Sequence record: LR756504.1
Strand: one strand, 5' to 3'
Length of the DNA stretch: 64,000 nt
A program made the position numbers and the translations under genes. Below are positions 14,724 to 44,842 of the stretch, piece by piece (the first letter of the stretch is position 1; every line of letters starts with the position of its first letter). The notes below the pieces were generated by a model. It was given only the letters and a program-made list of their open reading frames with translations. It searched no databases and was not told the origin of the DNA.

Positions 14724-17324
14724 ATGGACTTTAAAAAAACCTTTATAGATTTAACACAATGGGTAATACCTCATGGATATGAGGAAAGTATTACACATTT
14801 ACTACCAGAAGGATGTCAGAAAGACGGTAAAGGTAATTATTCTATTACTATAGGGGAGTCTGAAACGCTTTTTACATGTCACTTAGATACAGTATCAAGT
14901 AGAGCTAAAATTACACATGTTTTTGAAGATAATTGGATTAAAACAGATGGCACAACAATATTAGGTGGTGACAATAAAGCAGGAGTATGTATTTTGATGT
15001 ATCTAATTGAACAAAATGTTCCTGGTACATATTACTTCTTTGTGGGTGAAGAGTGTGGACGTTTAGGTTCTAAATGGGCATTAGAAAATAATGGAGACTT
15101 TTTTAGGAAGTTTAAACGTGCGATAGCTTTTGATAGAAGAAATAGGGGCTCTATTATTACTCACCAAAGCTCAAGACTTTGTGCATCATCAGAATTCACA
15201 GAAGCTCTTTCTAAAGAAATGGCTAAATCGGGATTAGAATATAAAGCTGATTCAGGTGGATCATATACGGACACTTATACATTTATCGATGCAATACCAG
15301 AGTGTACTAATTTGTCGGCATCAGTTATGGGTGAACATACAACATCTGAAAAGATTGATATTGTACACTGTGAAGAAATTGCAAAAGCCGCTTCATTGGT
15401 TGATTGGGAAAAATTACCTTCTAATAGAGACTTCTCTAAAAAAGAATGGAAAAGTTATAATAACTATAGTAGTGAATGGGATAGCTATTTTGATGAATAT
15501 CGTTCTTATGATGTAAAACCTAAAGCAGAAATTAAGAAAAAATCTATTAGTGAATGTGGATTAGAATTTGATGTTTCTAATATTGATAAGTTCTTCAATT
15601 TGAAAAAAATTGTTGAAGGTGAAGAAATTTACTATAAATCAGAAGATGGTAAAAGTTATTATATTAATATTGATTATAATTTAGTTGCTGTTGAAGAAGA
15701 TATGTATCATGTATATCCATATTTCATACAGCATTATGTTAAAAAAGATAATTTACCAACTACATTTGAAGAATTATGGTATGTTATAAAAGATTTAAAA
15801 ATTTCTTTTAAACCAATTGAAGAACAAAAAAATATTCCATTCTATCAAAACAATATTTGTGAGTATTTTGATTTGGAAGAAATAATGGATAATCACAAAA
15901 ATAGATTATTTATAGACCCATTGACTTTAAGAGAGTTTCAATTTGAATTTGATGATAAATGGGTTGGTATATGGGAAGTTTTAAATAGAGAACCTTATGT
16001 GAGTCCGATATATGCCAACGATAATACTTTTAAATCATTCTCTGAACTGTGGGCTGATATTAGAGAATACGTACCATTTAGAAGAAACGGTAAAGCTGAA
16101 AATCCATTCTTTAATGGGGGGACTAAAATTAAGTCTTATAATAAGATACTTGATGTAGTAAATGTTAATAATGTTATACCATTTACACATGAAAATGTTG
16201 ATAAATATTTTGATTTAGTAAAAGTTAGTGTAAATAAAAGTACAGTTGATAATTACTATAAAAGTCCTAATGGAGAAAAAATATATTTTATTGAGATTTC
16301 ACCAAATTCAAAAGCTTATGTTTGGGAAAGGAATTCTGGATCTTCATCATTAGTTTATAATAAACAATTCTTTTCTTTTGATAGTTTTTGGAGTGAGATT
16401 AAAGATAAAGTAGAATTTAAAAAGAGAGAGGATGATTTAGATGATATACTATCTCAATTGAAAATTCCATTTAGATCAGATAATATCGAAAAATTCTTTA
16501 ATTTAAAAAGAAGAGAAAGAGATAATAGTCATACTAACGCAAATAAAAAAAGTTTATTTTTCAAATCTGAAAATGATAAATCATACTTTTTTAAAATCGA
16601 AGAAGATGGGTATGTATACATGGTAGATTTATCTGGTCAATTAAATGGTAAAACACAAGTTATTATTAATTATGTTAGATATAATTCATTCGAAAAACTT
16701 TGGGAAGATATTAAAGATAAGGTAGATTTTAAAAAAAATGAATCTAAACCAGTTTTATCAAAAGAATCTTTAAAAATACCATTTACAAATGATAATGTTT
16801 GTAGGGTTTTTAATTTTAAGGAACAACAACTAAGAAGTAGACATTATTTAACAGAAGATACCAATATACAGTATTATTTTGATATTCTTGAAAACAATAT
16901 AGTTTATTTGTGGGAAAGAATAAATGGAAAATTTAACACTATTGTTGATGGTGCGGTGTATAATTCATTTGATGATATATGGAAAGATGTTCAATTACAT
17001 GTTAAATTTAAAAAGAGAGAAGTAGTATCATTTACACAAGATAATGTATCAACGTATTTTGATTTGGTAGATAGTAAATTCAGATGTTTTTATTATCATA
17101 AAGAAACTGATAAAAATTTCTTTATACACTGTGGTAAAAATAAAAATAAGTCAGTCGTTAAATTGGTTAAATATAAAGATTTACCAGAAACAAATACAGG
17201 CGTTAAACAGGTTGATAGAATGGAAAATTTATATTTTAGCGGTGTTAATTCTATTAATTCATTTGATGAATTTTGGGAGGAAATTAAAGATAAAGTACCA
17301 TTTAAAAAAAGAGGAGCTAATTAG
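14724..17324 (+). CDS. M28/M20-like zinc peptidase fused to six ~85-95 aa repeats
   Basis: FTCHLDTV, LGGDNKAG, VGEE, AFDR, YTD, GEHT; repeats of the form PF..DN..K.F.L ... SF..LW..IKDKV.FKK. Confidence 0.8.
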   Translation: MDFKKTFIDLTQWVIPHGYEESITHLLPEGCQKDGKGNYSITIGESETLFTCHLDTVSSRAKITHVFEDNWIKTDGTTILGGDNKAGVCILMYLIEQNVPGTYYFFVGEECGRLGSKWALENNGDFFRKFKRAIAFDRRNRGSIITHQSSRLCASSEFTEALSKEMAKSGLEYKADSGGSYTDTYTFIDAIPECTNLSASVMGEHTTSEKIDIVHCEEIAKAASLVDWEKLPSNRDFSKKEWKSYNNYSSEWDSYFDEYRSYDVKPKAEIKKKSISECGLEFDVSNIDKFFNLKKIVEGEEIYYKSEDGKSYYINIDYNLVAVEEDMYHVYPYFIQHYVKKDNLPTTFEELWYVIKDLKISFKPIEEQKNIPFYQNNICEYFDLEEIMDNHKNRLFIDPLTLREFQFEFDDKWVGIWEVLNREPYVSPIYANDNTFKSFSELWADIREYVPFRRNGKAENPFFNGGTKIKSYNKILDVVNVNNVIPFTHENVDKYFDLVKVSVNKSTVDNYYKSPNGEKIYFIEISPNSKAYVWERNSGSSSLVYNKQFFSFDSFWSEIKDKVEFKKREDDLDDILSQLKIPFRSDNIEKFFNLKRRERDNSHTNANKKSLFFKSENDKSYFFKIEEDGYVYMVDLSGQLNGKTQVIINYVRYNSFEKLWEDIKDKVDFKKNESKPVLSKESLKIPFTNDNVCRVFNFKEQQLRSRHYLTEDTNIQYYFDILENNIVYLWERINGKFNTIVDGAVYNSFDDIWKDVQLHVKFKKREVVSFTQDNVSTYFDLVDSKFRCFYYHKETDKNFFIHCGKNKNKSVVKLVKYKDLPETNTGVKQVDRMENLYFSGVNSINSFDEFWEEIKDKVPFKKRGAN

Positions 17325-17395: not shown

Positions 17396-19069
17396 ATGAA
17401 GTATTTAAAGAAATACGGTAATTTTTCTATTAATGAGGCTACTGAAAATGAGTCTATTCTTATAAAGAATAAAGGTATGTCTAAAGATGAAGAAAAAGCA
17501 TTTTTAAATGACATTTTTACATATATCAAAGGTATTGAAAATATTTCAGATATTTTAAATAATAAAGTTAGAATTAAAAATGATGATATTATAGTAGTAG
17601 ATAGAAGAGGAAAAAATGTACTTTTTAAATATAAGCAGGATAGTAATGAAAAAATTAAAGTTTACATTAAATCTGACTTATTTGAGCAAGGTAAAAAAGA
17701 AGACATATTGAATCTTTTAATTAGTAAAGGAGCGGATGTAGAAGTATCTAAACCAGAAGAAAAATATGATAAAAAAGTAGAGGTTAAAACTGAGCCTAAA
17801 ACAAATATACAAAAAATATCATGGGAAGATTTTAATAAGAAGTGGGTATCTGTTATTAATTTAATTAAAACAGATGGTGTTAAAAATGGTGTACCATTAT
17901 TAAAAATTGCTGACATGAATTCATTATATACAAGTAAGAAAGAATATGTTCTGTTTGTACAAGAGTTTTTAAATTTTAATAATAAAAGTAATTTAATACT
18001 TGATGGTAAATTTGGAAATAATACTTCATTAGAAGTTAGGAAATTTCAAATTGCTAATAATTTAGCAGATGATGGTGTAGTTGGACCTTTAACATGGGAG
18101 AAAATTATGGATTTATCGGGTAATCCGATAAAAGGGTTAAAAATTATTTCAACTTCAACACCAATAGTAAATAATGTTAACAAATTAACTTCAATTAAAG
18201 TAGGTAGTTATTTAAATTCAAAGACTGTTGCATCTTTATTTGAAAATAAAATATTTGAAGCAGTAGTATCTAAAAATGATGTGAAAGTTAAAGTTTTAGC
18301 TAACGATGGTAAAACAATAAAATTACAATTTTCAAATTTAGGTAAAATTGTAGAAGAAGTATTTAATTTAGATGTTAATGGTGCTATAATTAAAGATATA
18401 GCTAAAATGTCAAAAGTTAAAATTGCTTTAGGTATTGAAAGAGAGTCCGTAACTATTGAAAACAGAAAAGGTATTATAAAGGATGTACGCGGTAAAGATA
18501 TGTCATTAGAAACTCTAAAAAATGCAGGAAATGCTTGGTATAATAATCCTAACACAGTTTTAGCTTTAATAGTAAACAATGCTGATAATTCTAATGCAAT
18601 TCATGGTATAAATGAATTATATTTTAAAAATACAAATAGTAATTTATTTCAATTTGCTTTTGATGGAAAATATGAATCCTCTTGGTCGGATGCAACTAAA
18701 TCTATATTTACTTCTTCTATTCTTTCGCCTGTTGCACTTTTTGCAATAGCTGGTACTGGATTTAATGTTGCTTGGAATATGAGAAAGAATTATACTACAC
18801 AATTTAATTTACTTGATATTTTAACTACATATTTACAAGATGCTGAAACAGATGCTAATGTATTACATTGGTGTATAGATGGACCTGGTACAGAAGATAA
18901 TATAATAGAAATGTTAATTAATAAAAGAGCAGGAAAACCTGCTTCATATAAGCAACGAATAGCATCAGAGTATTTATCAAAATATAATGCTACTTTGGGT
19001 GATGATTTAGCAGATGATGATGTTGATTCTGAGTTAATTGGAAAAATAGTTCCAAATTATATAGCATAG
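17396..19069 (+). CDS. Leader-bearing protein with peptidoglycan-binding domain and C-terminal annexin-like repeat(s)
   Basis: MKYLKKYGNFSINE leader; LILDGKFGNNT..EVRKFQIANNLADDGVVGPLTW (PG_binding_1 pattern); DANVLHWCIDGPGTEDNIIEMLINKR...I..EY..KY...L.DDL. Confidence 0.7.
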   Translation: MKYLKKYGNFSINEATENESILIKNKGMSKDEEKAFLNDIFTYIKGIENISDILNNKVRIKNDDIIVVDRRGKNVLFKYKQDSNEKIKVYIKSDLFEQGKKEDILNLLISKGADVEVSKPEEKYDKKVEVKTEPKTNIQKISWEDFNKKWVSVINLIKTDGVKNGVPLLKIADMNSLYTSKKEYVLFVQEFLNFNNKSNLILDGKFGNNTSLEVRKFQIANNLADDGVVGPLTWEKIMDLSGNPIKGLKIISTSTPIVNNVNKLTSIKVGSYLNSKTVASLFENKIFEAVVSKNDVKVKVLANDGKTIKLQFSNLGKIVEEVFNLDVNGAIIKDIAKMSKVKIALGIERESVTIENRKGIIKDVRGKDMSLETLKNAGNAWYNNPNTVLALIVNNADNSNAIHGINELYFKNTNSNLFQFAFDGKYESSWSDATKSIFTSSILSPVALFAIAGTGFNVAWNMRKNYTTQFNLLDILTTYLQDAETDANVLHWCIDGPGTEDNIIEMLINKRAGKPASYKQRIASEYLSKYNATLGDDLADDDVDSELIGKIVPNYIA

Positions 19070-19146: not shown

Positions 19147-19830
19147 ATGAGAATCTTACTATTATTTATTTTTATTTTCTTATCAACATTATCTTTTTCA
19201 CAAACATTTAAGTATGAGAGAGCTAATATTGATATCTCATTTGATACAAGTTTTTACATTCCAGAATCTTGGAAAATTACAAAAACTAAAAATATTCAGA
19301 ATCAAGCACATTATGTGAATATTATTAAATCTTCTTTGGATAAATACCCTGTTAGTATTTTAAAAAATATTAAAAAAGTATATTTATTGAATACTCTTGC
19401 ATCTAATGGGGTGTCTATGGGCGGCACAAAATACGATGGTTTTATTTTTATTAAGGTTAAAGGTATAACAGATGTAAATATAGAGAAAACTCTCCATCAT
19501 GAGTTTTGTCATATTTTGTATTTTAAGTATGATAATTTATTCCCTACTACAGAGTGGATGAAAAATAATAAAATACAATATATTGGTAGTGGATTTAAAG
19601 CTTCTTATAATGGTAGTGATAGTAAATCTCATAAACCAGAGCTTTTTAAAGAAGGTTTTCTATATGATTATGCAACTATTTCTATAGACGAAGATATGGC
19701 ATCTTTAGCAGAAACATTGTTTTTTGATATTGATAAAATAGATATTAAAAATAATCAATTATTGAAAAATAAATATTTACTTTTAATATCTTTTTATAAA
19801 AAAATAGATTCAAATATTAATATTCATTAA
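19147..19830 (+). CDS. Secreted HEXXH zinc metallopeptidase-like protein
   Basis: Signal peptide; LHHEFCH plus downstream YA...EDMASLAE. Confidence 0.7.
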   Translation: MRILLLFIFIFLSTLSFSQTFKYERANIDISFDTSFYIPESWKITKTKNIQNQAHYVNIIKSSLDKYPVSILKNIKKVYLLNTLASNGVSMGGTKYDGFIFIKVKGITDVNIEKTLHHEFCHILYFKYDNLFPTTEWMKNNKIQYIGSGFKASYNGSDSKSHKPELFKEGFLYDYATISIDEDMASLAETLFFDIDKIDIKNNQLLKNKYLLLISFYKKIDSNINIH

Positions 19831-19853: not shown

Positions 19854-22800
19854 TTAAATGAACGCTTCTAATTCGATTGAATATGTTCTTTTTACTGTAT
19901 AGTTTGCACCATATCCATTTTCACAATTTACTTCAACTAAAATAAATGGGTCCATTATCCTATCTACAGCAAAGTTCAATGGTTTCATGTCCGTTTTCAA
20001 ATGGTTGATTATTCTAACGCTTTTTAATTTAAAATTTGGATCTTTAAAATTTGGATTAGCTGCAAATGTCATAATTTTTACTGTATAAAAATATGGTTTA
20101 AATTCTTCTGAATTAGTGAAAAATTCTAAGTGAATATTATATGTTCTCGAATTATTTTCAACTGGTTGTAAATACCCTTCTATTTTAAAGTCGACTGGTG
20201 TTAACATTTCTTTAATATGGAATTTTCTACTATGTTTAACATCGTGCCATAGTTCGGTATTGTGTGAAGTGTCACCTCTACCCGTTATATCTTTTATACG
20301 TGTTCCTATAGGCATTATCTTATCTCTTAACCATTTCTTCAATCCTAATAATTTAGTGATAACTTCATCTAATGAATATGCCAGTATTATATTACCATCT
20401 TTGTCGGTTATTCTATATGTTAAATTAAATAACCTGGTTTTCTCGTATCTAAAATTTGGAAGGGATTGTATGATATAATCATTAGCTGTCCAACCAGGTA
20501 CAGTATTATCGAATATGTCAGGAATTTCTACTTTGTGTAATTTGTTAAAATTTTTAGATTTACTATCTATGTTTTTATAGTATTCATATAATTCTAAATC
20601 ATTGTATCCAAAGTAATTGATAGCATTTATAAGAGCTTTATAAGAACCTAAATAATTATAAATTTCTGGATATACTAATAGCATTTCTTTTCTTTTTTGG
20701 TTCAAAAATATCCAATCAATACCATTTTCTTTTATGTCATACTCTTTGAATATAAATACGTCCCTATGGTTTATATTATATCCAAAATTATTTAACATTA
20801 CATTAAATCTTTCATCTTCTATTTCTGTTTGTCCTTTTAAAGATATACGTGCTATTTCTTGTGGAATAACTTCTATATTAATTTCTATTGCTACAACTTT
20901 TGTTTTAAATGGTGGAATTATATTTTTAGTTGTGGTTAATGTTGTTTCAGTTTTAATATCTTTATTTAAAGGTCTAAATCTCATTAAAGCAACATTAACT
21001 AAAGTTATCTCTCCTTCGAATCCTGAATTTTTAAATACTGCTTGATTCAATTTACTTGTAATATCTTTACCCGTAATTCTAACTCTTTGTCCAACTTTAA
21101 ATCCTGCTTGAATAAAATTTATTGTAGGTTCAGTGACATATAATTCTTGTCTATCATTATTGAATTCACAAACATCTTTCCATACTTCTTGAAATGAATT
21201 ATTTATTATTTTTCTTGTTGTAATAGTTTGATTGATATTTTCTAATCTCTGTATTAATAAAGTTCTTCTATTTACACCTTCATCTAATGATTTATATCCC
21301 ATGAATACTTGAAGTGGGACTGGTAAAGGATTTAAATCTTGTTCAGAATCTATAAGTTTAAGATTAAATGTGAGATCATTGAATATTGTTTGTTGATATT
21401 TTAAATCAGTTATTTTACTAATATCTCTGTTTGGGCTGTCATTTAAATAAACATTATTATCAGTATCAATTAAAGGTGTTATTCCTTTATATTGATAAAT
21501 TCCTTCGTCTGTTATTTTTAGTTGTTCTCCCGAAAAATCATAAAAGAATACTGATATATCATCATCCTCCAACCAAGTCATTTTGAATTGAACAGGTGCT
21601 TCACCATCAAATCTTTCTCTTGGGTATCTTAAAAATTCTCTTGTACTTAATGTGACAGTATTTACAACAGGTACATCCAATAATCTTGTAAATTCTATAT
21701 TATCCATAGCAACATAACCATTAGATAATCCTGATGCAAAAACAATTTTAATATTTGTAGATGGTATGTCTATATCTATATTAAACGTTCCGAAACTAGT
21801 TTGTATATTTTGGTATAATAGTGTAAATGTCGTTGGTCCATATACTTTATATATTGAAACTGAACCAGGTACATAAGTACCTGATGTGCTACCAAAGTAA
21901 CCACTAGTACCATTATTATATGTAGTATATTTGAAATTATATTTTCCGTGTGATGCTGCAAATATAGGTGTGCTAATACCTAAATTTTCAAAGAATTCAA
22001 CTTTCTCATTGAATACTTGATAAACATCATTGTAAACCCACCAAGCAGAACTATTACTTCCGAATGTTGGATTATCAATTAAATTTACACCTATACCAGA
22101 TGATGAATTATCATAAGTGTTCCAAACAAAACTACTTCTAGTTTCTATATAACTATTAGTATCAGTATTATCCCAAAATGGTCCTTGATAACTTAAACCA
22201 AGTGTTATAGGTTCAACTAAAATAATATTATATTCTTGGTTATTTAATGGATAAATAGAACCATTTATAGCAGTAACCATTCCTGTACCAAAACCAATTT
22301 CTTGGAAGTCTGCACCAGATACTAAATTAACTTCATTTCCAGCTAAAATGATACCACTGTTACCAGGCCTCCAATTAGTAATGATATAAAGTTCACTACC
22401 TGGCGTTGGATTTTTACCTACCCATACAGTATAATTAAAATTTGTTTTTTCCCTGAGTGTAGATAATCTTAAAATATTATTATTTAAATCAATAAAGGAT
22501 GTTCCACTTGTGCTATCTTGAAAATGATCAATTATTATTTCTTGGTCGATTAATGTAGCTTCCCACTCGTCTTTCCATGCCGCTATAGTAGTAGGTATTG
22601 ATCCTTGATATGTAATTGAGTAAGGTTGTCTATTAATTGTTATAGTTAATATTGTTCCAATTTCTTTAAATTCAATATCTGAGTGTAAAATTTTATGATT
22701 ATTAAGTGTTCCATTAACCTCATAGTCAATATGAACATTTGGATATTTTGATTGAAGTACTATTGTATCATATTTTGGATTTCCTTGTACATAACTTTCT

Positions 22801-25800
22801 TCACTTTTTTCAAGCCATGTTAAAATACCAAGTGATTCCAATACTTCAAAGTATCTTCTTCCAACTTCAGTATTATCTGGAAATGTTTTATCTTGTGTTA
22901 ATGTAAATTTAGTTGTTCCCCAATTGAATAAAGTTTCTTCTATATCAACAATATTGTCCTCTGTCGGAGATAAAATTGTTGTCACGTTATCAAAAGTAAC
23001 TGGATAATCAATGCCATTTATTTTCATTAAGAATCCGAATTCATTATCAATATCTTTAATTATTATTTTTCTTTCCCAAAGTTGCGAAATGCTTCTTGGT
23101 TTATTATATTTACCATAAGTGTGATTATATTCTGTTATAAGAGTTTCAACAGTATTTAATAAATCTACTGTTTTGTAATCATTTATTGGTGTTATTACTT
23201 CATATGTAGGTGGTACATTAGTGCCTGCTGTACCATTAGTGGCAGCCATAGCTAAAAATTCGTTAACAGCTATTGTATTATCTTTAAAGAAAGTTATATC
23301 AATATAATCATCATTAGATGTATTTGATTCTACTAAATAATTTCTAGCAAAACAAAGCTCAGTTAAATCTTGATATAAATCAATTCCATATCCAGCAAGT
23401 CCTTGTGTAAAATTAGAAATAAATCTAGATATTAATATATCAGTTGTGGCATTTACATCACCATTTTGTACAAAAGATACAACATTGTCATTTAAGTAAC
23501 AATCTGCTATTATGTTTTCTTTGAATTCTAATATATTAGTAGGATTGGATTCATCATTTGAATCAACCCATACTATTTTTTTATCATCGGGTAGTACATA
23601 CCAATTAGCTGCTTCATTGGGATATGTTCCTGTGAAATATACTATATGAAAATTGCCTTGTGATTTTCTATAGTGTACATAACCATTAAATAAACTATTA
23701 TCAATAACTACCCATTCGTCACCAACCACACCATATTTAGGTTTATTATCAGTTAATATACCATTGTGTAATATAAATTGTTTAGGTGTTGTTGTATTTA
23801 TAATATTTGTTAATTCAAATTTATAATTAGTTTTTTCCCATATCCAAACTTCTTTATCTACTGATATAGCAGCAATACCAACCACAGTATCTCTTATAGC
23901 TTTTGCTAAATTAAAAGCACCTTCTTCTAAAGTATTACCCCTCAACCAATCAACGCCTTCTTTTAAATTATATGATGATGTAGAATTTATTAAAATAGAA
24001 AATGTTATTGATTTTATAAGTTTATAATCAATTAATTCTATTCTATATCCACTTTCATCGTTAGTTTGTGGTGTTAATATGTTTTTAGCTTGATCTACTA
24101 GTATACATTTAAATTGGAAGTTCAAATTATTTTCAGTAATTAAGTTTTCAAAATAAAATCCTAAATCTGGTTTTAATAAATTTGGAGTATAATCTTTATT
24201 AGATAATTTCTCCCATACTAAAATATCTCTATTATTTAAAAAAGCATTTTCAGAAGATTTTGGAAGAAAATCAACTGGCGTAGAAGAAATTAAAACTCTA
24301 TTTGTTTTAAATTTAACATCAATTTTAAATCCGTATTTAACATCAGGAATTAGAACATTTATATCAACGCAGTTTATTTTTATAATTTTTGATATAATGT
24401 CATTACTAATGTCATCATTAATATAATTAACTGTATAAACACCATCATTTTTTTGTGAATTGATGATTGTTAATTTTTTCTTATCATATAATAGTGCTTT
24501 ATATTCTTGTTCGTTCCATTCAGAATTATACAATTGTGTATCAAATAATTTTATTAAATTAATACATTTTACTATACCTTGTGGTATTTTTTTAATTGCA
24601 TTGAGTAAATTTCTAAATTCTCCAAAATTATAATCTTGTCCTAAACTTCCCGCAGTACCATATTGACTACTATAAGTAGAGTTTGGCGTATCCGTTATTA
24701 CCATAATAGCATCTTTTCTATTACCAACGACTGTATAAGTTTTTAAGCCTGATGTTGTGAAAGATGAAAAATCTGCTATTGGTTGTTGCGAAAGATAAAA
24801 ACCATTTGTATCCAATTCAACTGAATAAACATCCTGAAAATATATTTCAGATCCTAGTGGAATCTTTATTTGAATATCATTTCCTTCTATCCATTTAGTA
24901 TAAAAATTAGCATCAGTATTAACAGCTTTTATGTTTGTTATTAAAATATCATCTGCCCATTTTTTTTCAAAATCAACACCATGTTCATTGAATATTTGCA
25001 TTTTATCCAATATTAAATCTTCTGATGTTAATTTTATAGGCTCTACTTTTTCTAAAACATATAAACCTACTGTTTTAAATGTGTCGGAGCTATTTGGATT
25101 GAATATCATATCACCTTCCCATCTATTCACACCATCATTATTAATAAACTCGAAATTTAAATTATCACCCTCTTTATTAAAAAACATTAAATTAGGAGTT
25201 ACATCAGATTCATATTTTTTACCAAATACCGAATTATGTACAGATATTATACAATTTTTAGTTAATTTTATAGTATTAATACCATTTGTAACAGAACATT
25301 CAATTAAAGAACGTACTTTAAAATTTTCAATTAATAAAGTATTACCATTACTACCAGCCGATTTACCATTAACTTTCCATGTATATCCTTGAGCAGGAAA
25401 TGTTGTATTTATATTGAAAGTAATGTTAGTATTATAATTAGTATAATCTGGTCCTATTATTTCAGTTGGAAATTCGAAAACATTAAAATTAATTGAATTG
25501 AAATATTTCAAGTTCCATGATGTACCAGAATCTTCAAAAACGCTTACTGATACAGTTCTTGCACCAGATCTGTAGAAAACTGTGGAAACTGGGTCACTAA
25601 AGCCTATAATTTCAAACAGTTTTTGATCTGATGTGCCTACATATCCTTCATCGAAGTTCCATATCCATTTTTCTGTACCATTTAGTATTAAGGGTGCTGT
25701 TGAAGCTGAACCATCTTCGTAAGTGAAAAATACCTCTTCTTTAATATTTACGTGATTTATATCGAAAGGCTCATTATTTTTATTTATGGTTAGTATATTA

Positions 25801-25805
25801 ATCAC
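19854..25805 (-). CDS. Giant virion structural protein, baseplate-wedge-like
   Basis: 1983 aa, beta-rich with an N-terminal PKD-like segment (WIWNFDEG, YTWKVNG); C-terminal YLGSYKALINAINYFGY..L..YEYY resembles myophage baseplate wedge proteins; late motif upstream. Confidence 0.55.
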   Translation of the reverse strand: MINILTINKNNEPFDINHVNIKEEVFFTYEDGSASTAPLILNGTEKWIWNFDEGYVGTSDQKLFEIIGFSDPVSTVFYRSGARTVSVSVFEDSGTSWNLKYFNSINFNVFEFPTEIIGPDYTNYNTNITFNINTTFPAQGYTWKVNGKSAGSNGNTLLIENFKVRSLIECSVTNGINTIKLTKNCIISVHNSVFGKKYESDVTPNLMFFNKEGDNLNFEFINNDGVNRWEGDMIFNPNSSDTFKTVGLYVLEKVEPIKLTSEDLILDKMQIFNEHGVDFEKKWADDILITNIKAVNTDANFYTKWIEGNDIQIKIPLGSEIYFQDVYSVELDTNGFYLSQQPIADFSSFTTSGLKTYTVVGNRKDAIMVITDTPNSTYSSQYGTAGSLGQDYNFGEFRNLLNAIKKIPQGIVKCINLIKLFDTQLYNSEWNEQEYKALLYDKKKLTIINSQKNDGVYTVNYINDDISNDIISKIIKINCVDINVLIPDVKYGFKIDVKFKTNRVLISSTPVDFLPKSSENAFLNNRDILVWEKLSNKDYTPNLLKPDLGFYFENLITENNLNFQFKCILVDQAKNILTPQTNDESGYRIELIDYKLIKSITFSILINSTSSYNLKEGVDWLRGNTLEEGAFNLAKAIRDTVVGIAAISVDKEVWIWEKTNYKFELTNIINTTTPKQFILHNGILTDNKPKYGVVGDEWVVIDNSLFNGYVHYRKSQGNFHIVYFTGTYPNEAANWYVLPDDKKIVWVDSNDESNPTNILEFKENIIADCYLNDNVVSFVQNGDVNATTDILISRFISNFTQGLAGYGIDLYQDLTELCFARNYLVESNTSNDDYIDITFFKDNTIAVNEFLAMAATNGTAGTNVPPTYEVITPINDYKTVDLLNTVETLITEYNHTYGKYNKPRSISQLWERKIIIKDIDNEFGFLMKINGIDYPVTFDNVTTILSPTEDNIVDIEETLFNWGTTKFTLTQDKTFPDNTEVGRRYFEVLESLGILTWLEKSEESYVQGNPKYDTIVLQSKYPNVHIDYEVNGTLNNHKILHSDIEFKEIGTILTITINRQPYSITYQGSIPTTIAAWKDEWEATLIDQEIIIDHFQDSTSGTSFIDLNNNILRLSTLREKTNFNYTVWVGKNPTPGSELYIITNWRPGNSGIILAGNEVNLVSGADFQEIGFGTGMVTAINGSIYPLNNQEYNIILVEPITLGLSYQGPFWDNTDTNSYIETRSSFVWNTYDNSSSGIGVNLIDNPTFGSNSSAWWVYNDVYQVFNEKVEFFENLGISTPIFAASHGKYNFKYTTYNNGTSGYFGSTSGTYVPGSVSIYKVYGPTTFTLLYQNIQTSFGTFNIDIDIPSTNIKIVFASGLSNGYVAMDNIEFTRLLDVPVVNTVTLSTREFLRYPRERFDGEAPVQFKMTWLEDDDISVFFYDFSGEQLKITDEGIYQYKGITPLIDTDNNVYLNDSPNRDISKITDLKYQQTIFNDLTFNLKLIDSEQDLNPLPVPLQVFMGYKSLDEGVNRRTLLIQRLENINQTITTRKIINNSFQEVWKDVCEFNNDRQELYVTEPTINFIQAGFKVGQRVRITGKDITSKLNQAVFKNSGFEGEITLVNVALMRFRPLNKDIKTETTLTTTKNIIPPFKTKVVAIEINIEVIPQEIARISLKGQTEIEDERFNVMLNNFGYNINHRDVFIFKEYDIKENGIDWIFLNQKRKEMLLVYPEIYNYLGSYKALINAINYFGYNDLELYEYYKNIDSKSKNFNKLHKVEIPDIFDNTVPGWTANDYIIQSLPNFRYEKTRLFNLTYRITDKDGNIILAYSLDEVITKLLGLKKWLRDKIMPIGTRIKDITGRGDTSHNTELWHDVKHSRKFHIKEMLTPVDFKIEGYLQPVENNSRTYNIHLEFFTNSEEFKPYFYTVKIMTFAANPNFKDPNFKLKSVRIINHLKTDMKPLNFAVDRIMDPFILVEVNCENGYGANYTVKRTYSIELEAFI

Positions 25806-31808: not shown

Positions 31809-33296
31809 ATGGTACTTGACTTTGAATACAAAGCTGGAAAGCTAATAATTTCTGAAATTAATGAACAAGGTAATGTGGTGTTCAATCATTATAATTGGAA
31901 AAATCCAAGGAAATTTGTTCCTACAACATTTGATGATAAAGATAAACATCCAAAATATCAAACGTGGGATAAAAAGGCTGTTAAATTAGTTCCAACAAAT
32001 AATCCGAATCGTTTTTCAATATATGAATTTGTAGATGCTCTCGAAAAAGAAGAACAAGATAGATTATTTGCGCCACAATATCCTAAAATGTTTTTTATAG
32101 ATATTGAGACCGAAATCCTTCCTACAGGATTTGTTGATCCTAAAGATGCTACAACCAGAGTACTAACAGTTGCAATTGTAAATGATGATAATGTATTGAT
32201 ATTAGGATTGAAACCTCTAACACAACAAGAGTTAGAGAAAGTAAAGGATGATATTGAAAACCATTTTAAAGATTTCAATTTAAAAATAAAATTGAAATAT
32301 AAATATTTTGGTGGATATGATAATCCAGAAAAGGAAATGATGAAATATTTATTTCATGATTTGATTCCAAAGATGCCTGTTATTACAGGATGGAATTTCG
32401 TAGATTACGACTGGACATTTTTAATTAATCGTTGTAGAAGATTGGGTATTGATCCATCGGTATCCAGTCCTACTAAAAGATTGGAGAAAGTATTTGGTAC
32501 ACCATATGAAGTTCCTGCTCATAGATTGGTAATTGACTATATGGAAATTTGGAAGAAGCCTTGGAATCAGTTCGTAAAAGTTAAAGAAAGTAATAGCTTA
32601 GATTGGGTAGGTAGACACTTATTCAAAAATATATCTAAACATCATTACGAAGGTTCTTTACAGGATATGTATGAAAACAATTTTGTAGAGTATGCTTTTT
32701 ATAATGCTGTTGATACTATACTTGTTAGAATGATTCACGAAAAGACTAGATTGTTGGATATTATAATTTCAATGGCCAATCTTTCTAAAATTAGATTATG
32801 TGATTTTGCATATAAAAATCTTAATGCAACTTTGGTTTCCACTGAAGGATTTTTAAGAGGTAAATTTAGAGAAGAAAAGAACATAGTTCTTTGTAAAGAT
32901 TTTGAAGATGATGCTGCTGAAACTATTGCAGGGGGTTATGTAAAAAGCCCAGAAAAAGGACTACAAGAGTGGATAGCAACATATGACTTTGCTTCACTAT
33001 ATCCGCGAACTCAGATGGAGTTGAATATTGCGCCTGAAACATTTAGAGGATTTCAATTAAAAGATGATTTGGGTTATGCTGAATTTGATGGTGTAATTAA
33101 TAAAATTGAAGAAACTGATATTGTTTGTGTTAATGGTGCGGTATTTAGTAATGAGAAATCTGTTACTGTAGGGTTTTTGGAAGATGTGTATGCACAGAGA
33201 AAGCATTATAAGGGATTAATGGATAATGCGAAAAATGATTTAAAAGAGGTAGAAAAAGAGCTTAAGAAATTAGAAGATGAATTGAATAATTTGTAA
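31809..33296 (+). CDS. Family B DNA polymerase, N-terminal piece (3'-5' exonuclease plus motif A) of a split enzyme
   Basis: DIETE, TGWNFVDYDW, YNAVDT and DFASLYP are present; the ORF stops after RKHYK plus a coiled helix, lacking KxxxNSxYG and DTDS. Confidence 0.88.
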   Translation: MVLDFEYKAGKLIISEINEQGNVVFNHYNWKNPRKFVPTTFDDKDKHPKYQTWDKKAVKLVPTNNPNRFSIYEFVDALEKEEQDRLFAPQYPKMFFIDIETEILPTGFVDPKDATTRVLTVAIVNDDNVLILGLKPLTQQELEKVKDDIENHFKDFNLKIKLKYKYFGGYDNPEKEMMKYLFHDLIPKMPVITGWNFVDYDWTFLINRCRRLGIDPSVSSPTKRLEKVFGTPYEVPAHRLVIDYMEIWKKPWNQFVKVKESNSLDWVGRHLFKNISKHHYEGSLQDMYENNFVEYAFYNAVDTILVRMIHEKTRLLDIIISMANLSKIRLCDFAYKNLNATLVSTEGFLRGKFREEKNIVLCKDFEDDAAETIAGGYVKSPEKGLQEWIATYDFASLYPRTQMELNIAPETFRGFQLKDDLGYAEFDGVINKIEETDIVCVNGAVFSNEKSVTVGFLEDVYAQRKHYKGLMDNAKNDLKEVEKELKKLEDELNNL

Positions 33297-33357: not shown

Positions 33358-33708
33358 ATGAAATTTTTAAAGAAATTTAACTCTTTCGTTAATGAAAGCA
33401 AAACCTTTACTGCTGGTTTATACCCACACTTTGAAACAGATGATATAATTTATATTGAAAAAGTTCACGAAAATGGCGATGTAGAAGCTTTTGAATTGTT
33501 AGCTACTTTGGATGATATAGTAAAATGGTTTGTAGATAAACACGGTAGAGATACTTTTGAAGATCAATTTAATCCAGAAGAAGGACATACCACCAAAGAT
33601 TGGGATATGTCAGATGAAGAAATTGAAGAGGTTGTTAAAAATAATGATCAATATCTTAAAGAATTCTGTGAAGATAAAATAGCTGAGTGGGTAAAAGTTT
33701 CTGAGTAA
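33358..33708 (+). CDS. Acidic hypothetical protein with capsid-targeting-like leader
   Basis: MKFLKKFNSFVNES. Confidence 0.7.
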   Translation: MKFLKKFNSFVNESKTFTAGLYPHFETDDIIYIEKVHENGDVEAFELLATLDDIVKWFVDKHGRDTFEDQFNPEEGHTTKDWDMSDEEIEEVVKNNDQYLKEFCEDKIAEWVKVSE

Positions 33709-41351: not shown

Positions 41352-42560
41352 ATGTCTAATAACAATAAATTAGTTATAGTTCCTAAAAGAACAAATTATA
41401 GCGTTTATCCTCCAATAACCGCACCAGAAATACCTATTACATTGAATGTGAACCTATTGAAAGACGTACACTCTGTTCAAACGAGTTCATATAAATGTGA
41501 TAGAATGATGCAGTATATTATAGGCTTTTTGAAAAAAAAGAAAAATGTTCATGTTCAAGAGGATGCATATGGTAATATTTATGCAACTAAAGGAAATGCT
41601 GATTTATATCCAGCAATTGTTTCTCACACAGATACAGTTCATAGTATTCATGAACATTTTCAGGTTATGCAGGATGAAAATATTATTTGGGCATTTTCAA
41701 ATGATAAACGAACTCAAGTAGGTGTTGGTGGTGATGACAAAGTGGGTGTGTTCATGTGTCTTTCTATGCTTGAATTACTTCCAAAAGTTAAAATTGCTTT
41801 TTTTAAAGACGAAGAAGTTGGTTGTATTGGTTCAGGTAGAGCTAATATGCAATTTTTTGATGATTGTGGATTTGTTTTGCAATGCGATAGAAAAGGTTCT
41901 GACGACTTCATTTATAATGCGGGTACAGAATTGTATGGTGCTAATTTTGAAAAAGCTGTTGCACCATATTTAGAAAAACATGGGTATAGAGAAACTACGG
42001 GGTTAATGACAGATGTTTTAGAATTGAAGGGAAAAGGATTAGCTGTAGCATGTGCTAATATGTCATGTGGTTATTACTCGCCTCATTCTGATAATGAAGT
42101 TCTTGATTTAAATGCAGTGCAAAAATGCTATAATTTAGTATCCGAATTGATGTTAGATTTCATAGATACTCGTTTTCCACACGATAAAAACAATAAGCAT
42201 AGTAAGGGGGGCTATTCGTACTCATATAGTGGGTACGGGTATGGGCGCGATAATGATGATGATTTTGACAACTACGACTATGGAAGAAGCTCGTATTTTA
42301 GAAATGATAACAGAGAAAATATCGAAGATGACGAAACGGATTTTGATGATATTTATAACAATGGTGGCTTATCTATTAGTGAAGATGATATTTTAGAAAA
42401 TTGGGGACTTACTAAAAAAGAGAATGATTATTATGCAGTAAATGATAAATGTAAGGAGTGTAAAGAAATTCTAGAAGAAGACATTGATGGTATAAAACTT
42501 TGTCCATGTTGTAATTCGTACAAACATATACCAAAAATGTATTTAAGAGATACAATTTAA
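41352..42560 (+). CDS. M28/M20-like zinc peptidase with acidic linker and C-terminal zinc ribbon
   Basis: SHTDTVH, GGDDKVG, DEEVGC.GS, QCDR, TDV, GYY.PH; CKEC...CPCC. Confidence 0.8.
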   Translation: MSNNNKLVIVPKRTNYSVYPPITAPEIPITLNVNLLKDVHSVQTSSYKCDRMMQYIIGFLKKKKNVHVQEDAYGNIYATKGNADLYPAIVSHTDTVHSIHEHFQVMQDENIIWAFSNDKRTQVGVGGDDKVGVFMCLSMLELLPKVKIAFFKDEEVGCIGSGRANMQFFDDCGFVLQCDRKGSDDFIYNAGTELYGANFEKAVAPYLEKHGYRETTGLMTDVLELKGKGLAVACANMSCGYYSPHSDNEVLDLNAVQKCYNLVSELMLDFIDTRFPHDKNNKHSKGGYSYSYSGYGYGRDNDDDFDNYDYGRSSYFRNDNRENIEDDETDFDDIYNNGGLSISEDDILENWGLTKKENDYYAVNDKCKECKEILEEDIDGIKLCPCCNSYKHIPKMYLRDTI

Positions 42561-42682: not shown

Positions 42683-44842
42683 ATGGATTTCAAAAAAACT
42701 TTCTTGAAATTTACCCAATGGACTATTCCACACGGATATGAGGAAACTATTACTCACCTTTTACCAAATGGGTTGGAAAAGGATGAAGTTGGTAATTATA
42801 GAATCGTTATTGGCGAAAGTGAAACATTATTTACTTGCCACTTGGATACAGTATCTACTCGTATGAAAATTAATCATATCATACAAGGTGATATCATTAG
42901 AACTGATGGCACAACAATATTAGGTGGTGACAATAAAGCAGGAGTATGTATTTTGATGTATCTAATTGAACAAAATGTTCCTGGTACATATTACTTCTTT
43001 GTGGGTGAAGAAACTGGTTGTATTGGTTCAAGATGGGCTTTAAAAAATGAGCCTGACTATTTTAGAAAGTTTAAGAGAGCTATTGCATTCGACAGGAAAA
43101 AATCGGGTTCAATTATTACAAAACAAAGAGGTAGTATTTGTGCAAGTATAGATTTTGCCGAAGCTCTTTCGAAAGATTATGGTAAAAATGGATTACAATA
43201 TCGTCCTGATGATACAGGGGTTTATACCGACACAGCCGTATTCATGGGTATAATTCCAGAATGTACAAATATTTCAGCAGCAGTTTGGGGTGAACATACT
43301 AGGGATGAATATGTAAATATCAAATTAATTGAACAAATTGCACATGCATCTGCTAAAATTAATTGGGAGAAATTGCCAACAAAACGTACACCAAGAGACG
43401 AAGAAAAAGAGAAAAAGAAAATTACTACTTATGGTAATAATTATGATGAATATGGCAGTGGTCACACACATTATAATAGTAGAAATAAAAGCACGTCTTA
43501 TCAACATAATAATACTTGGCAAAATACAACCAAAAAAGATGATGATGGTATTCCTGTCGATGGTGCTGATTTAACTTTTAATGTTGATAATGTTCCATCT
43601 TTCTTTGAATTAACTAAAATTCAAAGTCATGGTGATACTGATGATAAATCTGAATATTTTGCGGATAAAGAAGGTACAATTTGGATGATCACTATTAATA
43701 GTGATACTGTATCTATTGCAAAAGAATTGCAGAATGGTATGCCAGATATTGTATATCATGAATCATTGAAGTCAAATATTCCAAAAAATTTCAATGAATT
43801 ATGGGAAAGAATTAAAGATGTTGTGTCACTAAAAAGAAAAAAGAAAAAGAAGAAAACTCAAAATGCCGTTATTAAAGAGACTAAGCGTACAGTGACTTTA
43901 ATAGTTCCGCCGTCTGTTTCATTCATTAAGATTCAAGATATTATTAATGATGATAGTAGAATTAAAGCCGTTGAATTAGTAAGAAATGGTAGTGCTGTTA
44001 GCGGAGATAAAAAATATTTTGATATAGCTTTAGTATTTGATAGTAGCAAACCATATGAAGTTGTATCCAATATAGTGGATAGCACTATAGAAAAGTTTAA
44101 AAAACAACTTGGTGCTATTGTTAGTACTAAAGCTGGTACAGTTGTTGGTAAATTTGATAATAGTGGTACTCAAATGAATATGTTTGGTAAACCACTTACT
44201 ATTGATAATATAGTTAAAGTTTTTGATCTTAAAAAAGCAGAAGTTGGTGAAGAAGGTTCTCTAATATTTAAGGAGCGATTTGAAGATAAAGATGGTACTA
44301 TTTATAATATTGAAATTGATGGAAATATTGTAAGCGTATTCTTGATAAGTAGCTCTAATACTAAAGGACAATATAAACTTTTATTTCATGGTGCTGTAAA
44401 ATCGTGGGATGAATTATATGATTCTATTAAAGATAAAGTTGGATTTTCTAAAAAGGATAGTGAACCATTATATAATGAGAAAAATTTTGATAAAGCCTTC
44501 GAACTTGTAAATATTAATTCTGATAGTAAACCAGGTGTTTCTCTTAAAGATTCTTATAGAGATGTTAAGGGTAATGTGTGGACATTTACAATACAAGCTG
44601 ATGGTGATACTACAATTTTCTTAAATAGAAGCAGTATCGCTAGTAGTGGACAAGGATACTTTGTTATCAGAATTAATGGTATTAAATCTTATGATGATTT
44701 TGTTAAGAAAATAAAAGAAAGTGATAGAAGTGTAGATTCATTTGATAAGACGGTATTATTTAATCTTATTGATACTTATAAATTCAAAAAATCTTCTGTA
44801 ATTGATGATGAAGAGGAAGAAGAGGATGACGACGATGAATAA
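42683..44842 (+). CDS. M28/M20-like peptidase paralogue with three ~90-aa repeats and acidic tail
   Basis: N-terminal ~240 aa closely similar to 14724 (MDFKKTF, FTCHLDTV, LGGDNKAG, AFDR, GEHT); three repeats; ends DDEEEEEDDDDE. Confidence 0.82.
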   Translation: MDFKKTFLKFTQWTIPHGYEETITHLLPNGLEKDEVGNYRIVIGESETLFTCHLDTVSTRMKINHIIQGDIIRTDGTTILGGDNKAGVCILMYLIEQNVPGTYYFFVGEETGCIGSRWALKNEPDYFRKFKRAIAFDRKKSGSIITKQRGSICASIDFAEALSKDYGKNGLQYRPDDTGVYTDTAVFMGIIPECTNISAAVWGEHTRDEYVNIKLIEQIAHASAKINWEKLPTKRTPRDEEKEKKKITTYGNNYDEYGSGHTHYNSRNKSTSYQHNNTWQNTTKKDDDGIPVDGADLTFNVDNVPSFFELTKIQSHGDTDDKSEYFADKEGTIWMITINSDTVSIAKELQNGMPDIVYHESLKSNIPKNFNELWERIKDVVSLKRKKKKKKTQNAVIKETKRTVTLIVPPSVSFIKIQDIINDDSRIKAVELVRNGSAVSGDKKYFDIALVFDSSKPYEVVSNIVDSTIEKFKKQLGAIVSTKAGTVVGKFDNSGTQMNMFGKPLTIDNIVKVFDLKKAEVGEEGSLIFKERFEDKDGTIYNIEIDGNIVSVFLISSSNTKGQYKLLFHGAVKSWDELYDSIKDKVGFSKKDSEPLYNEKNFDKAFELVNINSDSKPGVSLKDSYRDVKGNVWTFTIQADGDTTIFLNRSSIASSGQGYFVIRINGIKSYDDFVKKIKESDRSVDSFDKTVLFNLIDTYKFKKSSVIDDEEEEEDDDDE

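What the first reader, a model, noticed from the sequence alone, without database searches (positions are those of the whole stretch)
15561..17312. Undescribed ~85-95 aa repeat, six copies in one peptidase and three in its paralogue
Seen: units begin (I/L)PF..(D/E)N(V/I).K.F.L, contain a Y/F-rich beta meander (K.Y(Y/F)(F/I).I) and end (F/Y).SF..(L/F)W..IKDKV.FKK. There are six tandem copies in 14724 and three in 42683 (about 43571-44720), the latter interrupted by a different ~100-aa insert. I recognise no Pfam match. Inference: a substrate-binding module whose copy number varies by recombination.
Basis: seen in the sequence. Interest (0 to 1): 0.65.

Follow-up and report, generated by a model that had tools for sequence, protein, structure and literature searches.

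The report
Orphan repeat domain on megaphage peptidases
Two zinc-peptidase genes of an uncultured 636-kb "megaphage" carry six and three copies of a real, previously undescribed ~90-residue protein domain that occurs only in a handful of related phages; it is probably a docking module, but its copy number is old and fixed, not actively changing.

Summary
ORF 14724-17324 (866 aa) has an N-terminal MH-clan (PepT/M42-like) zinc peptidase domain, a disordered Tyr/Asn/Ser-rich linker and six tandem 84-100 aa units. Its paralogue 42683-44842 (719 aa) has three units, with a 114-aa insert between units 1 and 2.

- **Statistics:** in leave-one-out profile tests each unit scores 23-68 bits, against at most 13.7 bits for 500 shuffles.
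- **Known families:** no Pfam, NCBIfam, PHROG or PDB sequence match.
- **Distribution:** a profile search of 1.84 billion representative proteins found three true relatives. With a fourth found by word search, these are orthologues from related phages with the same 6- or 3-unit layout.
- **Age of the array:** units cluster by position across four phages, and the DNA shows no long repeats. The array is therefore ancient and fixed, and "copy number varies by recombination" is not supported.
- **Function:** most likely a string of differentiated, non-catalytic binding or docking modules tethered to an intracellular phage exopeptidase. This is inferred, not shown.

It is a new lineage-restricted domain family of moderate interest.

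The parts
14724..17324 (+). Gene P0001 (866 aa): peptidase domain, linker and six repeat units
   Evidence: ORF and translation. It is 100% identical to LR756504.1 238784-241384. Orthologues are P0003, P0005 and P0006.
14724..15422 (+). MH-clan (PepT/M42-like) di-zinc peptidase domain without a lid, residues 1-233
   Evidence: phrog_4191 at 2e-61. TIGR01883 PepT-like at 2e-12. PDB 3gb0 PepT at 7e-11, with HxD, GxDxKAG and GEE aligned. Foldseek matches PepT, TET and DapE at 1e-8 to 1e-6. H53, D55, D83, E109, E110, D137 and H205 are invariant in six proteins.
15423..15557 (+). Disordered Tyr/Asn/Ser/Asp-rich linker, residues 234-278
   Evidence: pLDDT is 22-41 in the full-length model. Identity among orthologues is only 30-55%.
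15558..15821 (+). Repeat unit 1 (residues 279-366)
   Evidence: Leave-one-out score 40.8 bits against a shuffle maximum of 9.7. Forms a position clade with u1 of three orthologues.
15831..16094 (+). Repeat unit 2 (residues 370-457), followed by a 26-aa linker
   Evidence: Leave-one-out score 37.5 bits against 9.5. Position clade. The linker 461-483 has pLDDT below 50.
16173..16433 (+). Repeat unit 3 (residues 484-570), the unit that was modelled
   Evidence: Leave-one-out score 62.6 bits against 11.6. AlphaFold2 pLDDT 91.4, pTM 0.80, topology a1-b1..b5-a2.
16461..16742 (+). Repeat unit 4 (residues 580-673)
   Evidence: Leave-one-out score 68.3 bits against 11.3. Position clade.
16773..17024 (+). 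Repeat unit 5 (residues 684-767)
   Evidence: Leave-one-out score 41.1 bits against 13.2. Position clade.
17022..17321 (+). Repeat unit 6 (residues 767-866), with a longer b3-b4 region
   Evidence: Leave-one-out score 43.0 bits against 10.4. Position clade.
42683..44842 (+). Gene P0002 (719 aa): paralogous peptidase, three units, an insert and an acidic tail
   Evidence: ORF and translation. phrog_4191 at 3e-61. The peptidase domain is 68% identical to that of P0001. Orthologue P0007.
43568..43846 (+). P0002 unit 1 (residues 296-388)
   Evidence: Leave-one-out score 45.5 bits against 13.7.
43847..44188 (+). Unrelated 114-aa insert (residues 389-502), predicted ferredoxin-like
   Evidence: Not matched by the unit profile. 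Conserved in P0007. ESM Atlas structural neighbours are FDX-ACB domains at TM 0.69-0.72.
44189..44461 (+). P0002 unit 2 (residues 503-593)
   Evidence: Leave-one-out score 49.1 bits against 10.3.
44462..44752 (+). P0002 unit 3 (residues 594-690), the most divergent unit
   Evidence: Leave-one-out score 23.3 bits against 12.0. It lacks the conserved Trp.
41352..42560 (+). Third peptidase paralogue P0004 (402 aa) without any unit, directly upstream of P0002
   Evidence: phrog_4191 at 1e-53. No unit was detected in it.

Best explanation
P0001 and P0002 are intracellular enzymes of a megaphage. Each has a lid-less MH-clan (M20/M42-like) di-zinc exopeptidase or amidohydrolase domain. A roughly 45-residue disordered linker tethers this domain to a string of six (or three) small, independently folding alpha+beta modules. 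Each module is a short helix, a five-stranded antiparallel meander and a second helix. The residues shared by all units form the hydrophobic core. The loops and surfaces differ between positions but are conserved between orthologues at the same position. So the units are one scaffold with six differentiated surfaces. The most likely role is as non-catalytic docking modules that bind proteins or peptides, hold the peptidase on its targets or inside a larger assembly, and so stand in for the missing lid/oligomerisation domain. The array arose by ancient internal duplication and has been fixed since.

Shown here: the domain architecture, the reality and restricted distribution of the repeat, the fold topology, the intact catalytic residues and the fixed copy number. 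Inferred: the binding role and the nature of the ligand.
For: - **Repeat statistics:**
- **Peptidase identity and intact metal and catalytic residues:**
- **Unit fold:** the unit model has pLDDT 91.4 and pTM 0.80, with the order a-b5-a. In the full-length model every unit shows the same secondary-structure order at pLDDT of about 70-88. The inter-unit linkers and residues 234-279 fall below 50, and pTM is 0.33, which suggests units joined by flexible linkers.
- **Conservation pattern:** columns conserved in all 30 units are F4, N8, I/V9, F13, L15, S68, F69, L72, W73, I76, V80 and F82. Loop columns with overall identity of 0.2-0.3 reach 0.6-0.9 within a position.
- **Position clades** across four phages.
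- **Rates:** orthologues are 80-83% identical in the peptidase domain but 32-64% in the units, so the units are maintained but evolve faster.
- **Gene neighbourhood:** metabolic and proteostasis genes, namely GrpE, a second peptidase paralogue, an M16 peptidase, a GluRS/GlnRS-like synthetase, thioredoxin and PRPP synthase. Synteny is conserved in related phages.
Against: - No ligand, partner or activity has been tested.
- The shallow alignment (six sequences) could itself explain the low pTM of the full-length model, so packing between units is not excluded.
- The tool returned no model coordinates, so I read conserved core against variable surface from alignment columns and secondary structure only.
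- No RNA data show expression.
Confidence: 0.45

Rival explanations
1. The units are self-association modules. As FP domains do in Fbxo7 and PI31, they dimerise or stack with each other, within or between chains. This would build a multivalent oligomer or scaffold of peptidase domains, replacing the dimerisation or lid domain that M20/M42 enzymes use to oligomerise.
Confidence: 0.2
2. The units bind nucleic acid (RNA or tRNA), and the proteins act on nucleoprotein or translation-related targets.
For: The P0002 insert is predicted to resemble the ferredoxin-fold anticodon-binding domain of PheRS-beta, at TM 0.69-0.72. P0002 sits just downstream of a GluRS/GlnRS-like gene. Unit ends are basic (FKK/FKKR), units 4 and 6 have a pI of about 9, and P0002 carries an SSB-like acidic tail.
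Confidence: 0.1
3. The array is a passive spacer or a structural (for example virion-internal) extension with no specific ligand. A variant reading is a polyprotein cut at the conserved basic unit ends into separate ~90-aa proteins.
For: The units appear joined by flexible linkers. The most conserved sequence lies at unit boundaries (V.FKK then IPF). Units evolve two to three times faster than the catalytic domain.
Against: Position-specific conservation across four phages argues for specific constraints on each unit. The boundary residues F82 and F4 behave as core residues in a confident model. The neighbouring genes are metabolic, not structural. No free-standing single-unit protein exists among 1.84 billion representatives.
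Confidence: 0.1
4. The repeat is not a real protein feature but a compositional artefact of an AT-rich genome or a mis-assembled region.
For: The genome is 25-31% GC, and Lys/Asn/Tyr/Phe-rich sequence is expected at that composition.
Against: Shuffles that preserve composition never exceed 13.7 bits, while the units score 23-68 bits. Intact orthologues at 48-61% identity occur on contigs from four other samples. The structure model is confident.
Confidence: 0.01

Closest known systems
FP domain of Fbxo7 and PI31 (PDB 2vt8, 4l9c, 4ouh)
Type III secretion chaperone / YbjN-like, TolB N-terminal and frataxin/CyaY alpha+beta sandwiches
   Different: The scores are those of a common arrangement only. 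There is no sequence signal, and the sizes and helix lengths differ.
PepT (M20) and TET/M42 aminopeptidases, DapE catalytic domain (N-terminal domain only)
   Same: The HxD, bridging Asp, Glu-Glu, Asp and His metal/catalytic set is conserved. Sequence match to PDB 3gb0 is 7e-11, and Foldseek gives 1e-8 to 1e-6. The domain belongs to phrog_4191, which is widespread in Klebsiella, Pectobacterium and Thermus phages.
   Different: The lid/dimerisation domain inserted in M20 and M42 enzymes is absent. The other phage homologues are 260-410 aa and carry unrelated tails. None of them has the repeat.
Enzymes carrying tandem accessory binding modules (for example cell-wall-binding repeats on lysins, carbohydrate-binding-module arrays on glycosidases)
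   Same: One catalytic domain, a flexible linker and several copies of a small non-catalytic module.
   Different: This analogy comes from general knowledge only. The module here matches none of those families. The proteins also begin directly with the peptidase-homologous sequence. By eye there is no N-terminal hydrophobic stretch; no signal-peptide tool was run.

Membership tests
Any described repeat or domain family (Pfam-A, NCBIfam, PHROGs) for the unit | A profile match to the unit region | tested here: not met
   Whole proteins: Pfam gave no hit above noise, and the PHROG and NCBIfam hits cover only residues 24-280. Each of the nine units scanned alone against Pfam at E up to 10 gave only scattered hits at 0.095 or worse, each in a single unit.
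Any solved structure (PDB), by sequence | A profile match of the unit alignment to a PDB chain | tested here: not met
   The best E-values were 1.1 with 9 units and 1.0 with 30 units.
FP domain (Fbxo7/PI31) | Shared fold at a convincing structural score | tested here: inconclusive
FP domain (Fbxo7/PI31) | Homo- or heterodimerisation through the domain | not tested
   I ran no complex prediction, because the report does not claim a specific binding pair.
WGR domain (PF05406; a lead I recalled from the W-E-R..G motif in units 3 and 5) | A match to the Pfam WGR profile | tested here: not met
   The six-frame search of the phage record gave no match at E of 0.01 or better, while control genomes matched. 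WGR is absent from the per-unit Pfam scan and from the top 50 structural neighbours.
MH-clan metallopeptidase (M20/M42/M28), N-terminal domain | The co-catalytic metal ligands and general base (His-x-Asp, bridging Asp, Glu-Glu, Asp, His) | tested here: met
   H53, D55, D83, E109, E110, D137 and H205 are invariant in six proteins. The HxD, GxDxKAG, GEE and HTT motifs align to PepT 3gb0.
MH-clan metallopeptidase (M20/M42/M28), N-terminal domain | The catalytic-domain fold | tested here: met
   Foldseek matches to PepT, TET1, deblocking aminopeptidase and the DapE catalytic domain at E 1e-8 to 1e-6, probability 1.00. The model of this region has only pLDDT 50-84.
M20 family in the strict sense (PepT equivalog) | The inserted lid/dimerisation domain and a full-length profile score | tested here: not met
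   TIGR01883 scores 46.9 bits against a cut-off of 274 and covers only residues 48-117. The PepT residues between about 182 and 320 have no counterpart.
Recombination-driven variable-number tandem repeat | Near-identical DNA repeats and copy-number differences between close relatives | tested here: not met
   There are no long DNA repeats and no Tandem Repeats Finder array. All orthologues keep six or three units. Units cluster by position.
FDX-ACB (PF03147), for the P0002 insert | Profile match and fold | tested here: inconclusive
   Structural neighbours in the ESM Atlas reach TM 0.69-0.72 over about 94 residues, but there is no Pfam hit. The ferredoxin-like fold is very common.

The most novel reading that the evidence does not exclude
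The units are a new fold family of protein-recognition modules. Each of the six positions recognises a different host or phage protein, so a single phage exopeptidase is aimed at several targets at once. That would be a multi-specific targeting array used by megaphages to remodel the host proteome.
Probability: 0.2. Interest if true: 0.6.

Novelty: new variant of a known kind. Interest (0 to 1): 0.4.

Why it matters
Huge phages carry many proteins that nobody can read. Here an unannotated 590-residue tail resolves into a clean, confidently foldable domain family with no sequence relative outside one small phage lineage and no convincing structural neighbour. It is attached to a peptidase family (phrog_4191) that is widespread in phages, and the one phage-genome paper I read lists it only as a putative peptidase.

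If the units are docking modules, their partners would show what this peptidase family does during infection. The ~90-residue unit is small and well behaved enough for structure determination and pull-downs. The narrow distribution (five sequence clusters among 1.84 billion representatives) limits its general importance.

Tried and rejected
- **BLASTP self-comparison.** The first run listed no hit between units, probably because of how I filtered the output. Cutting out the units solved this.
- **WGR domain.** I recalled it from a W-E-R..G motif in two units and rejected it.
- **Profile search of three other megaphage genomes** (735, 635 and 642 kb). Only fragments at 20 bits or less came back, and two of the three contain stop codons. 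I take them as chance.
- **IMG/VR scans.** The scan with the 588-aa repeat region found nothing.
- **P0008.** This fourth hit of the large profile search (E 1.8e-5) is an unrelated tandem repeat that matches only 20 profile positions five times, so I dropped it.
- **ESM Atlas feature search.** No usable hit. Its structural neighbours for a unit were beta-propeller blades and a SWIM protein at TM 0.41-0.53, which is uninformative.
- **Foldseek against PDB and viral models.** Nothing at E of 0.001 or better.
- **Expression.** No RNA run holds the gene, so I did not lay reads.
- **Complex prediction.** Not run, because no specific binding pair is claimed.

Full report
**Source and setting**

The window is 25-31% GC. 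The gene in question is 100% identical to part of LR756504.1, an unannotated 636,363-bp uncultured "megaphage" genome. The copy held as the window's own genome is a 288.6-kb IMG/VR record. One soil metagenome run holds 99% of the gene's sampled words and may be the source of the assembly. No RNA run holds it.

The surrounding genes are metabolic, replicative and proteostatic, not structural:
- GH25 lysozyme and PRPP synthase
- an M16 peptidase
- family-B DNA polymerase pieces and a T4-type RNA ligase
- a GluRS/GlnRS-like synthetase and GrpE
- thioredoxin

**The observation**

ORF 14724-17324 (+) encodes 866 aa (P0001), and ORF 42683-44842 (+) encodes 719 aa (P0002).

I delimited the units as follows:

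| Protein | Units (residues) | Other features |
|---|---|---|
| P0001 | 279-366, 370-457, 484-570, 580-673, 684-767, 767-866 | 26-aa linker after unit 2 |
| P0002 | 296-388, 503-593, 594-690 | 114-aa unrelated insert at 389-502; poly-Asp/Glu tail |

The repeat is statistically solid:
- Pairwise BLASTP gives full-length alignments between units of up to 55 bits.
- Each unit was scored against a profile of the other eight. Scores were 23.3-68.3 bits, against at most 13.7 bits for 500 shuffles of the same unit.
- A profile of the window's nine units detects all six units of an independent orthologue at 3e-14 to 2e-25.

There are no other copies in the window's six frames or in the phage record.

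**What the proteins are**

Residues 1-~233 of both proteins are an MH-clan zinc peptidase domain.
- They match phrog_4191 "peptidase" at 2e-61 and 3e-61 and the PepT-like TIGR01883 at 2e-12.
- They match PDB 3gb0 (PepT) at 7e-11, with the His-x-Asp, Gly-x-Asp-x-Lys-Ala-Gly and Gly-Glu-Glu motifs aligned.
- Foldseek on the full-length model finds PepT, M42 TET aminopeptidases and the DapE catalytic domain at 1e-8 to 1e-6.
- H53, D55, D83, E109, E110, D137 and H205 are invariant in all six family members, so the domain looks catalytically competent.
- The lid/dimerisation domain that M20 and M42 enzymes insert into this domain is missing. Curated family cut-offs are far from met. It is a member of the clan, not a PepT equivalog.

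phrog_4191 homologues occur in 374 phage records (Klebsiella, Pectobacterium, Vibrio, Thermus and others). All match only the first ~250-290 residues of P0001. In the Klebsiella phage KP34 group the gene is listed only as "putative peptidase" (PMC4411677).

The phage has four paralogues:
- P0001
- P0002
- P0004 (41352-42560, 402 aa, directly upstream of P0002)
- a 398-aa one outside the window (L015)

The last two, and the 400-408-aa homologues of three other megaphages, have unrelated tails with no detectable unit.

**Is the unit known?**

No.
- Pfam, NCBIfam and PHROGs give nothing for the repeat region. This holds for the whole proteins and for the units scanned one by one at E up to 10.
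- Profile searches of PDB sequences give a best E of about 1.
- A word-index search with residues 277-866 found one relative, P0003 (877 aa, 50% identity over the repeat region).
- The exhaustive profile search of 1.84 billion cluster representatives has no length restriction. It found only P0005 (873 aa, six units), P0006 (877 aa, six units) and P0007 (693 aa, three units). A fourth hit, an unrelated repeat, was spurious.
- IMG/VR and three other megaphage genomes hold nothing convincing.

The domain is therefore confined to one small phage lineage and always sits behind this peptidase.

**Structure**

AlphaFold2 on unit 3 with the 30-unit alignment A3 gives pLDDT 91.4 and pTM 0.80. The order of elements is helix 6-12, strands 16-20, 23-30, 37-42, 47-53 and 61-65, then helix 69-76.

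The full-length model (six-sequence alignment) reproduces this order in all six units at pLDDT of about 70-88. The inter-unit linkers and residues 234-279 fall below 50, and pTM is 0.33. This suggests separately folded units joined by flexible linkers, with the caveat that the alignment is shallow.

| Search | Result |
|---|---|
| Foldseek against PDB and BFVD | nothing at E of 0.001 or better |

**Evolution of the array**

- P0006 and P0007 come from the same sequencing run, so a second phage also carries both the six-unit and the three-unit gene. Synteny is kept:
  - PRPP synthase, then two small genes, then the six-unit gene
  - GrpE, then the short peptidase, then the three-unit gene, then thioredoxin
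- In a maximum-likelihood tree of 30 units, positions u1, u2, u4 and u6 form well-supported clades across the four six-unit proteins. Position u5 has 92/89 support, and position u3 is unresolved. The three P0002/P0007 positions pair up as well.
- At the DNA level, only the 44- and 66-nt stretches coding the terminal motifs resemble each other, at 62-79%. Tandem Repeats Finder sees no array.
- Orthologues are 80-83% identical in the peptidase domain and 32-64% in the units.

So the duplications are ancient, the number of units is fixed, and each position is under its own constraint.

**Likely mechanism**

Columns conserved across all units behave as core residues of the helices and the terminal strand: F4, N8, I/V9, F13, L15, S68, F69, L72, W73, I76, V80 and F82, plus alternating aromatics in the strands. 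Loop columns that vary between positions are conserved within a position. Unit charge also differs, with pI 4.6-4.7 for units 1-2 and about 9 for units 4 and 6.

One scaffold with six differentiated, conserved surfaces on a flexible tether, attached to a lid-less exopeptidase, is best explained as an array of docking modules. These would hold the enzyme on protein or peptide targets or in a complex (confidence about 0.45).

Rival explanations:
- **Self-association or scaffolding in the manner of FP domains (0.2).**
- **Nucleic-acid binding (0.1).** The hints are the FDX-ACB-like predicted fold of the P0002 insert and the neighbouring aminoacyl-tRNA synthetase gene.
- **Passive spacer or a processed polyprotein (0.1).**

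None of these was tested directly. All functional statements are inference.

**Verdict**

The feature is a real, undescribed, lineage-restricted domain family in fixed tandem arrays on megaphage peptidases. It is a new variant of the familiar pattern of a catalytic domain plus tandem accessory modules, and of moderate interest.

Noticed in passing
window 43847-44188 (P0002 residues 389-502): The insert between units 1 and 2 of P0002 is conserved in P0007. Its ESM Atlas structural neighbours are the ferredoxin-fold anticodon-binding domains (FDX-ACB) of PheRS-beta at TM 0.69-0.72. It has no Pfam sequence hit.
   Followed up: partly
window 44804-44839: P0002 ends in a run of about 12 Asp/Glu residues. 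P0007 ends in a similar run of Glu. This is reminiscent of the acidic tails of single-strand-binding proteins.
   Followed up: no
window 41352-42560, and L015:1009-2205 (outside the window): There are two further paralogues of the same peptidase (402 and 398 aa) without any repeat unit. One lies directly between GrpE and P0002. The phage therefore has four copies of this peptidase family.
   Followed up: partly
window 15423-15557 and 43382-43567; L011 and L012 ORFs: All megaphage homologues have a low-complexity stretch rich in Tyr, Gly, Asn, Ser and Asp directly after the peptidase domain. It is predicted to be disordered (pLDDT 22-41).
   Followed up: partly
window 31809-33296, 33358-33708, 33712-35964: The family-B DNA polymerase exonuclease domain and part of the polymerase domain lie in a 495-aa ORF. 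A small ORF and a 750-aa ORF with no clear Pfam match follow it. This may be a split or interrupted polymerase gene.
   Followed up: no
window 17396-19069, 19147-19830, 19854-25805 (-): Downstream of P0001 lie three genes: a 557-aa protein with a peptidoglycan-binding domain, a 227-aa Peptidase_Mx1-like zinc peptidase, and a 1983-aa ORF with no family match. The same trio occurs next to the orthologue P0003 (L013), but with orientations changed.
   Followed up: partly
whole record (G000 compared with LR756504.1): The window's own genome is held as a 288.6-kb IMG/VR record classed as having inverted terminal repeats and 100% complete. The identical gene also lies in the 636-kb GenBank megaphage assembly, so one of the two records may be partial or differently assembled.
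   Followed up: no
L021 (LR756502.1 347649-347813, - strand): A weak match of the unit profile (16.5 bits, E 0.006 per genome) falls in a 249-aa ORF of another megaphage. I took it as chance and did not examine it.
   Followed up: no
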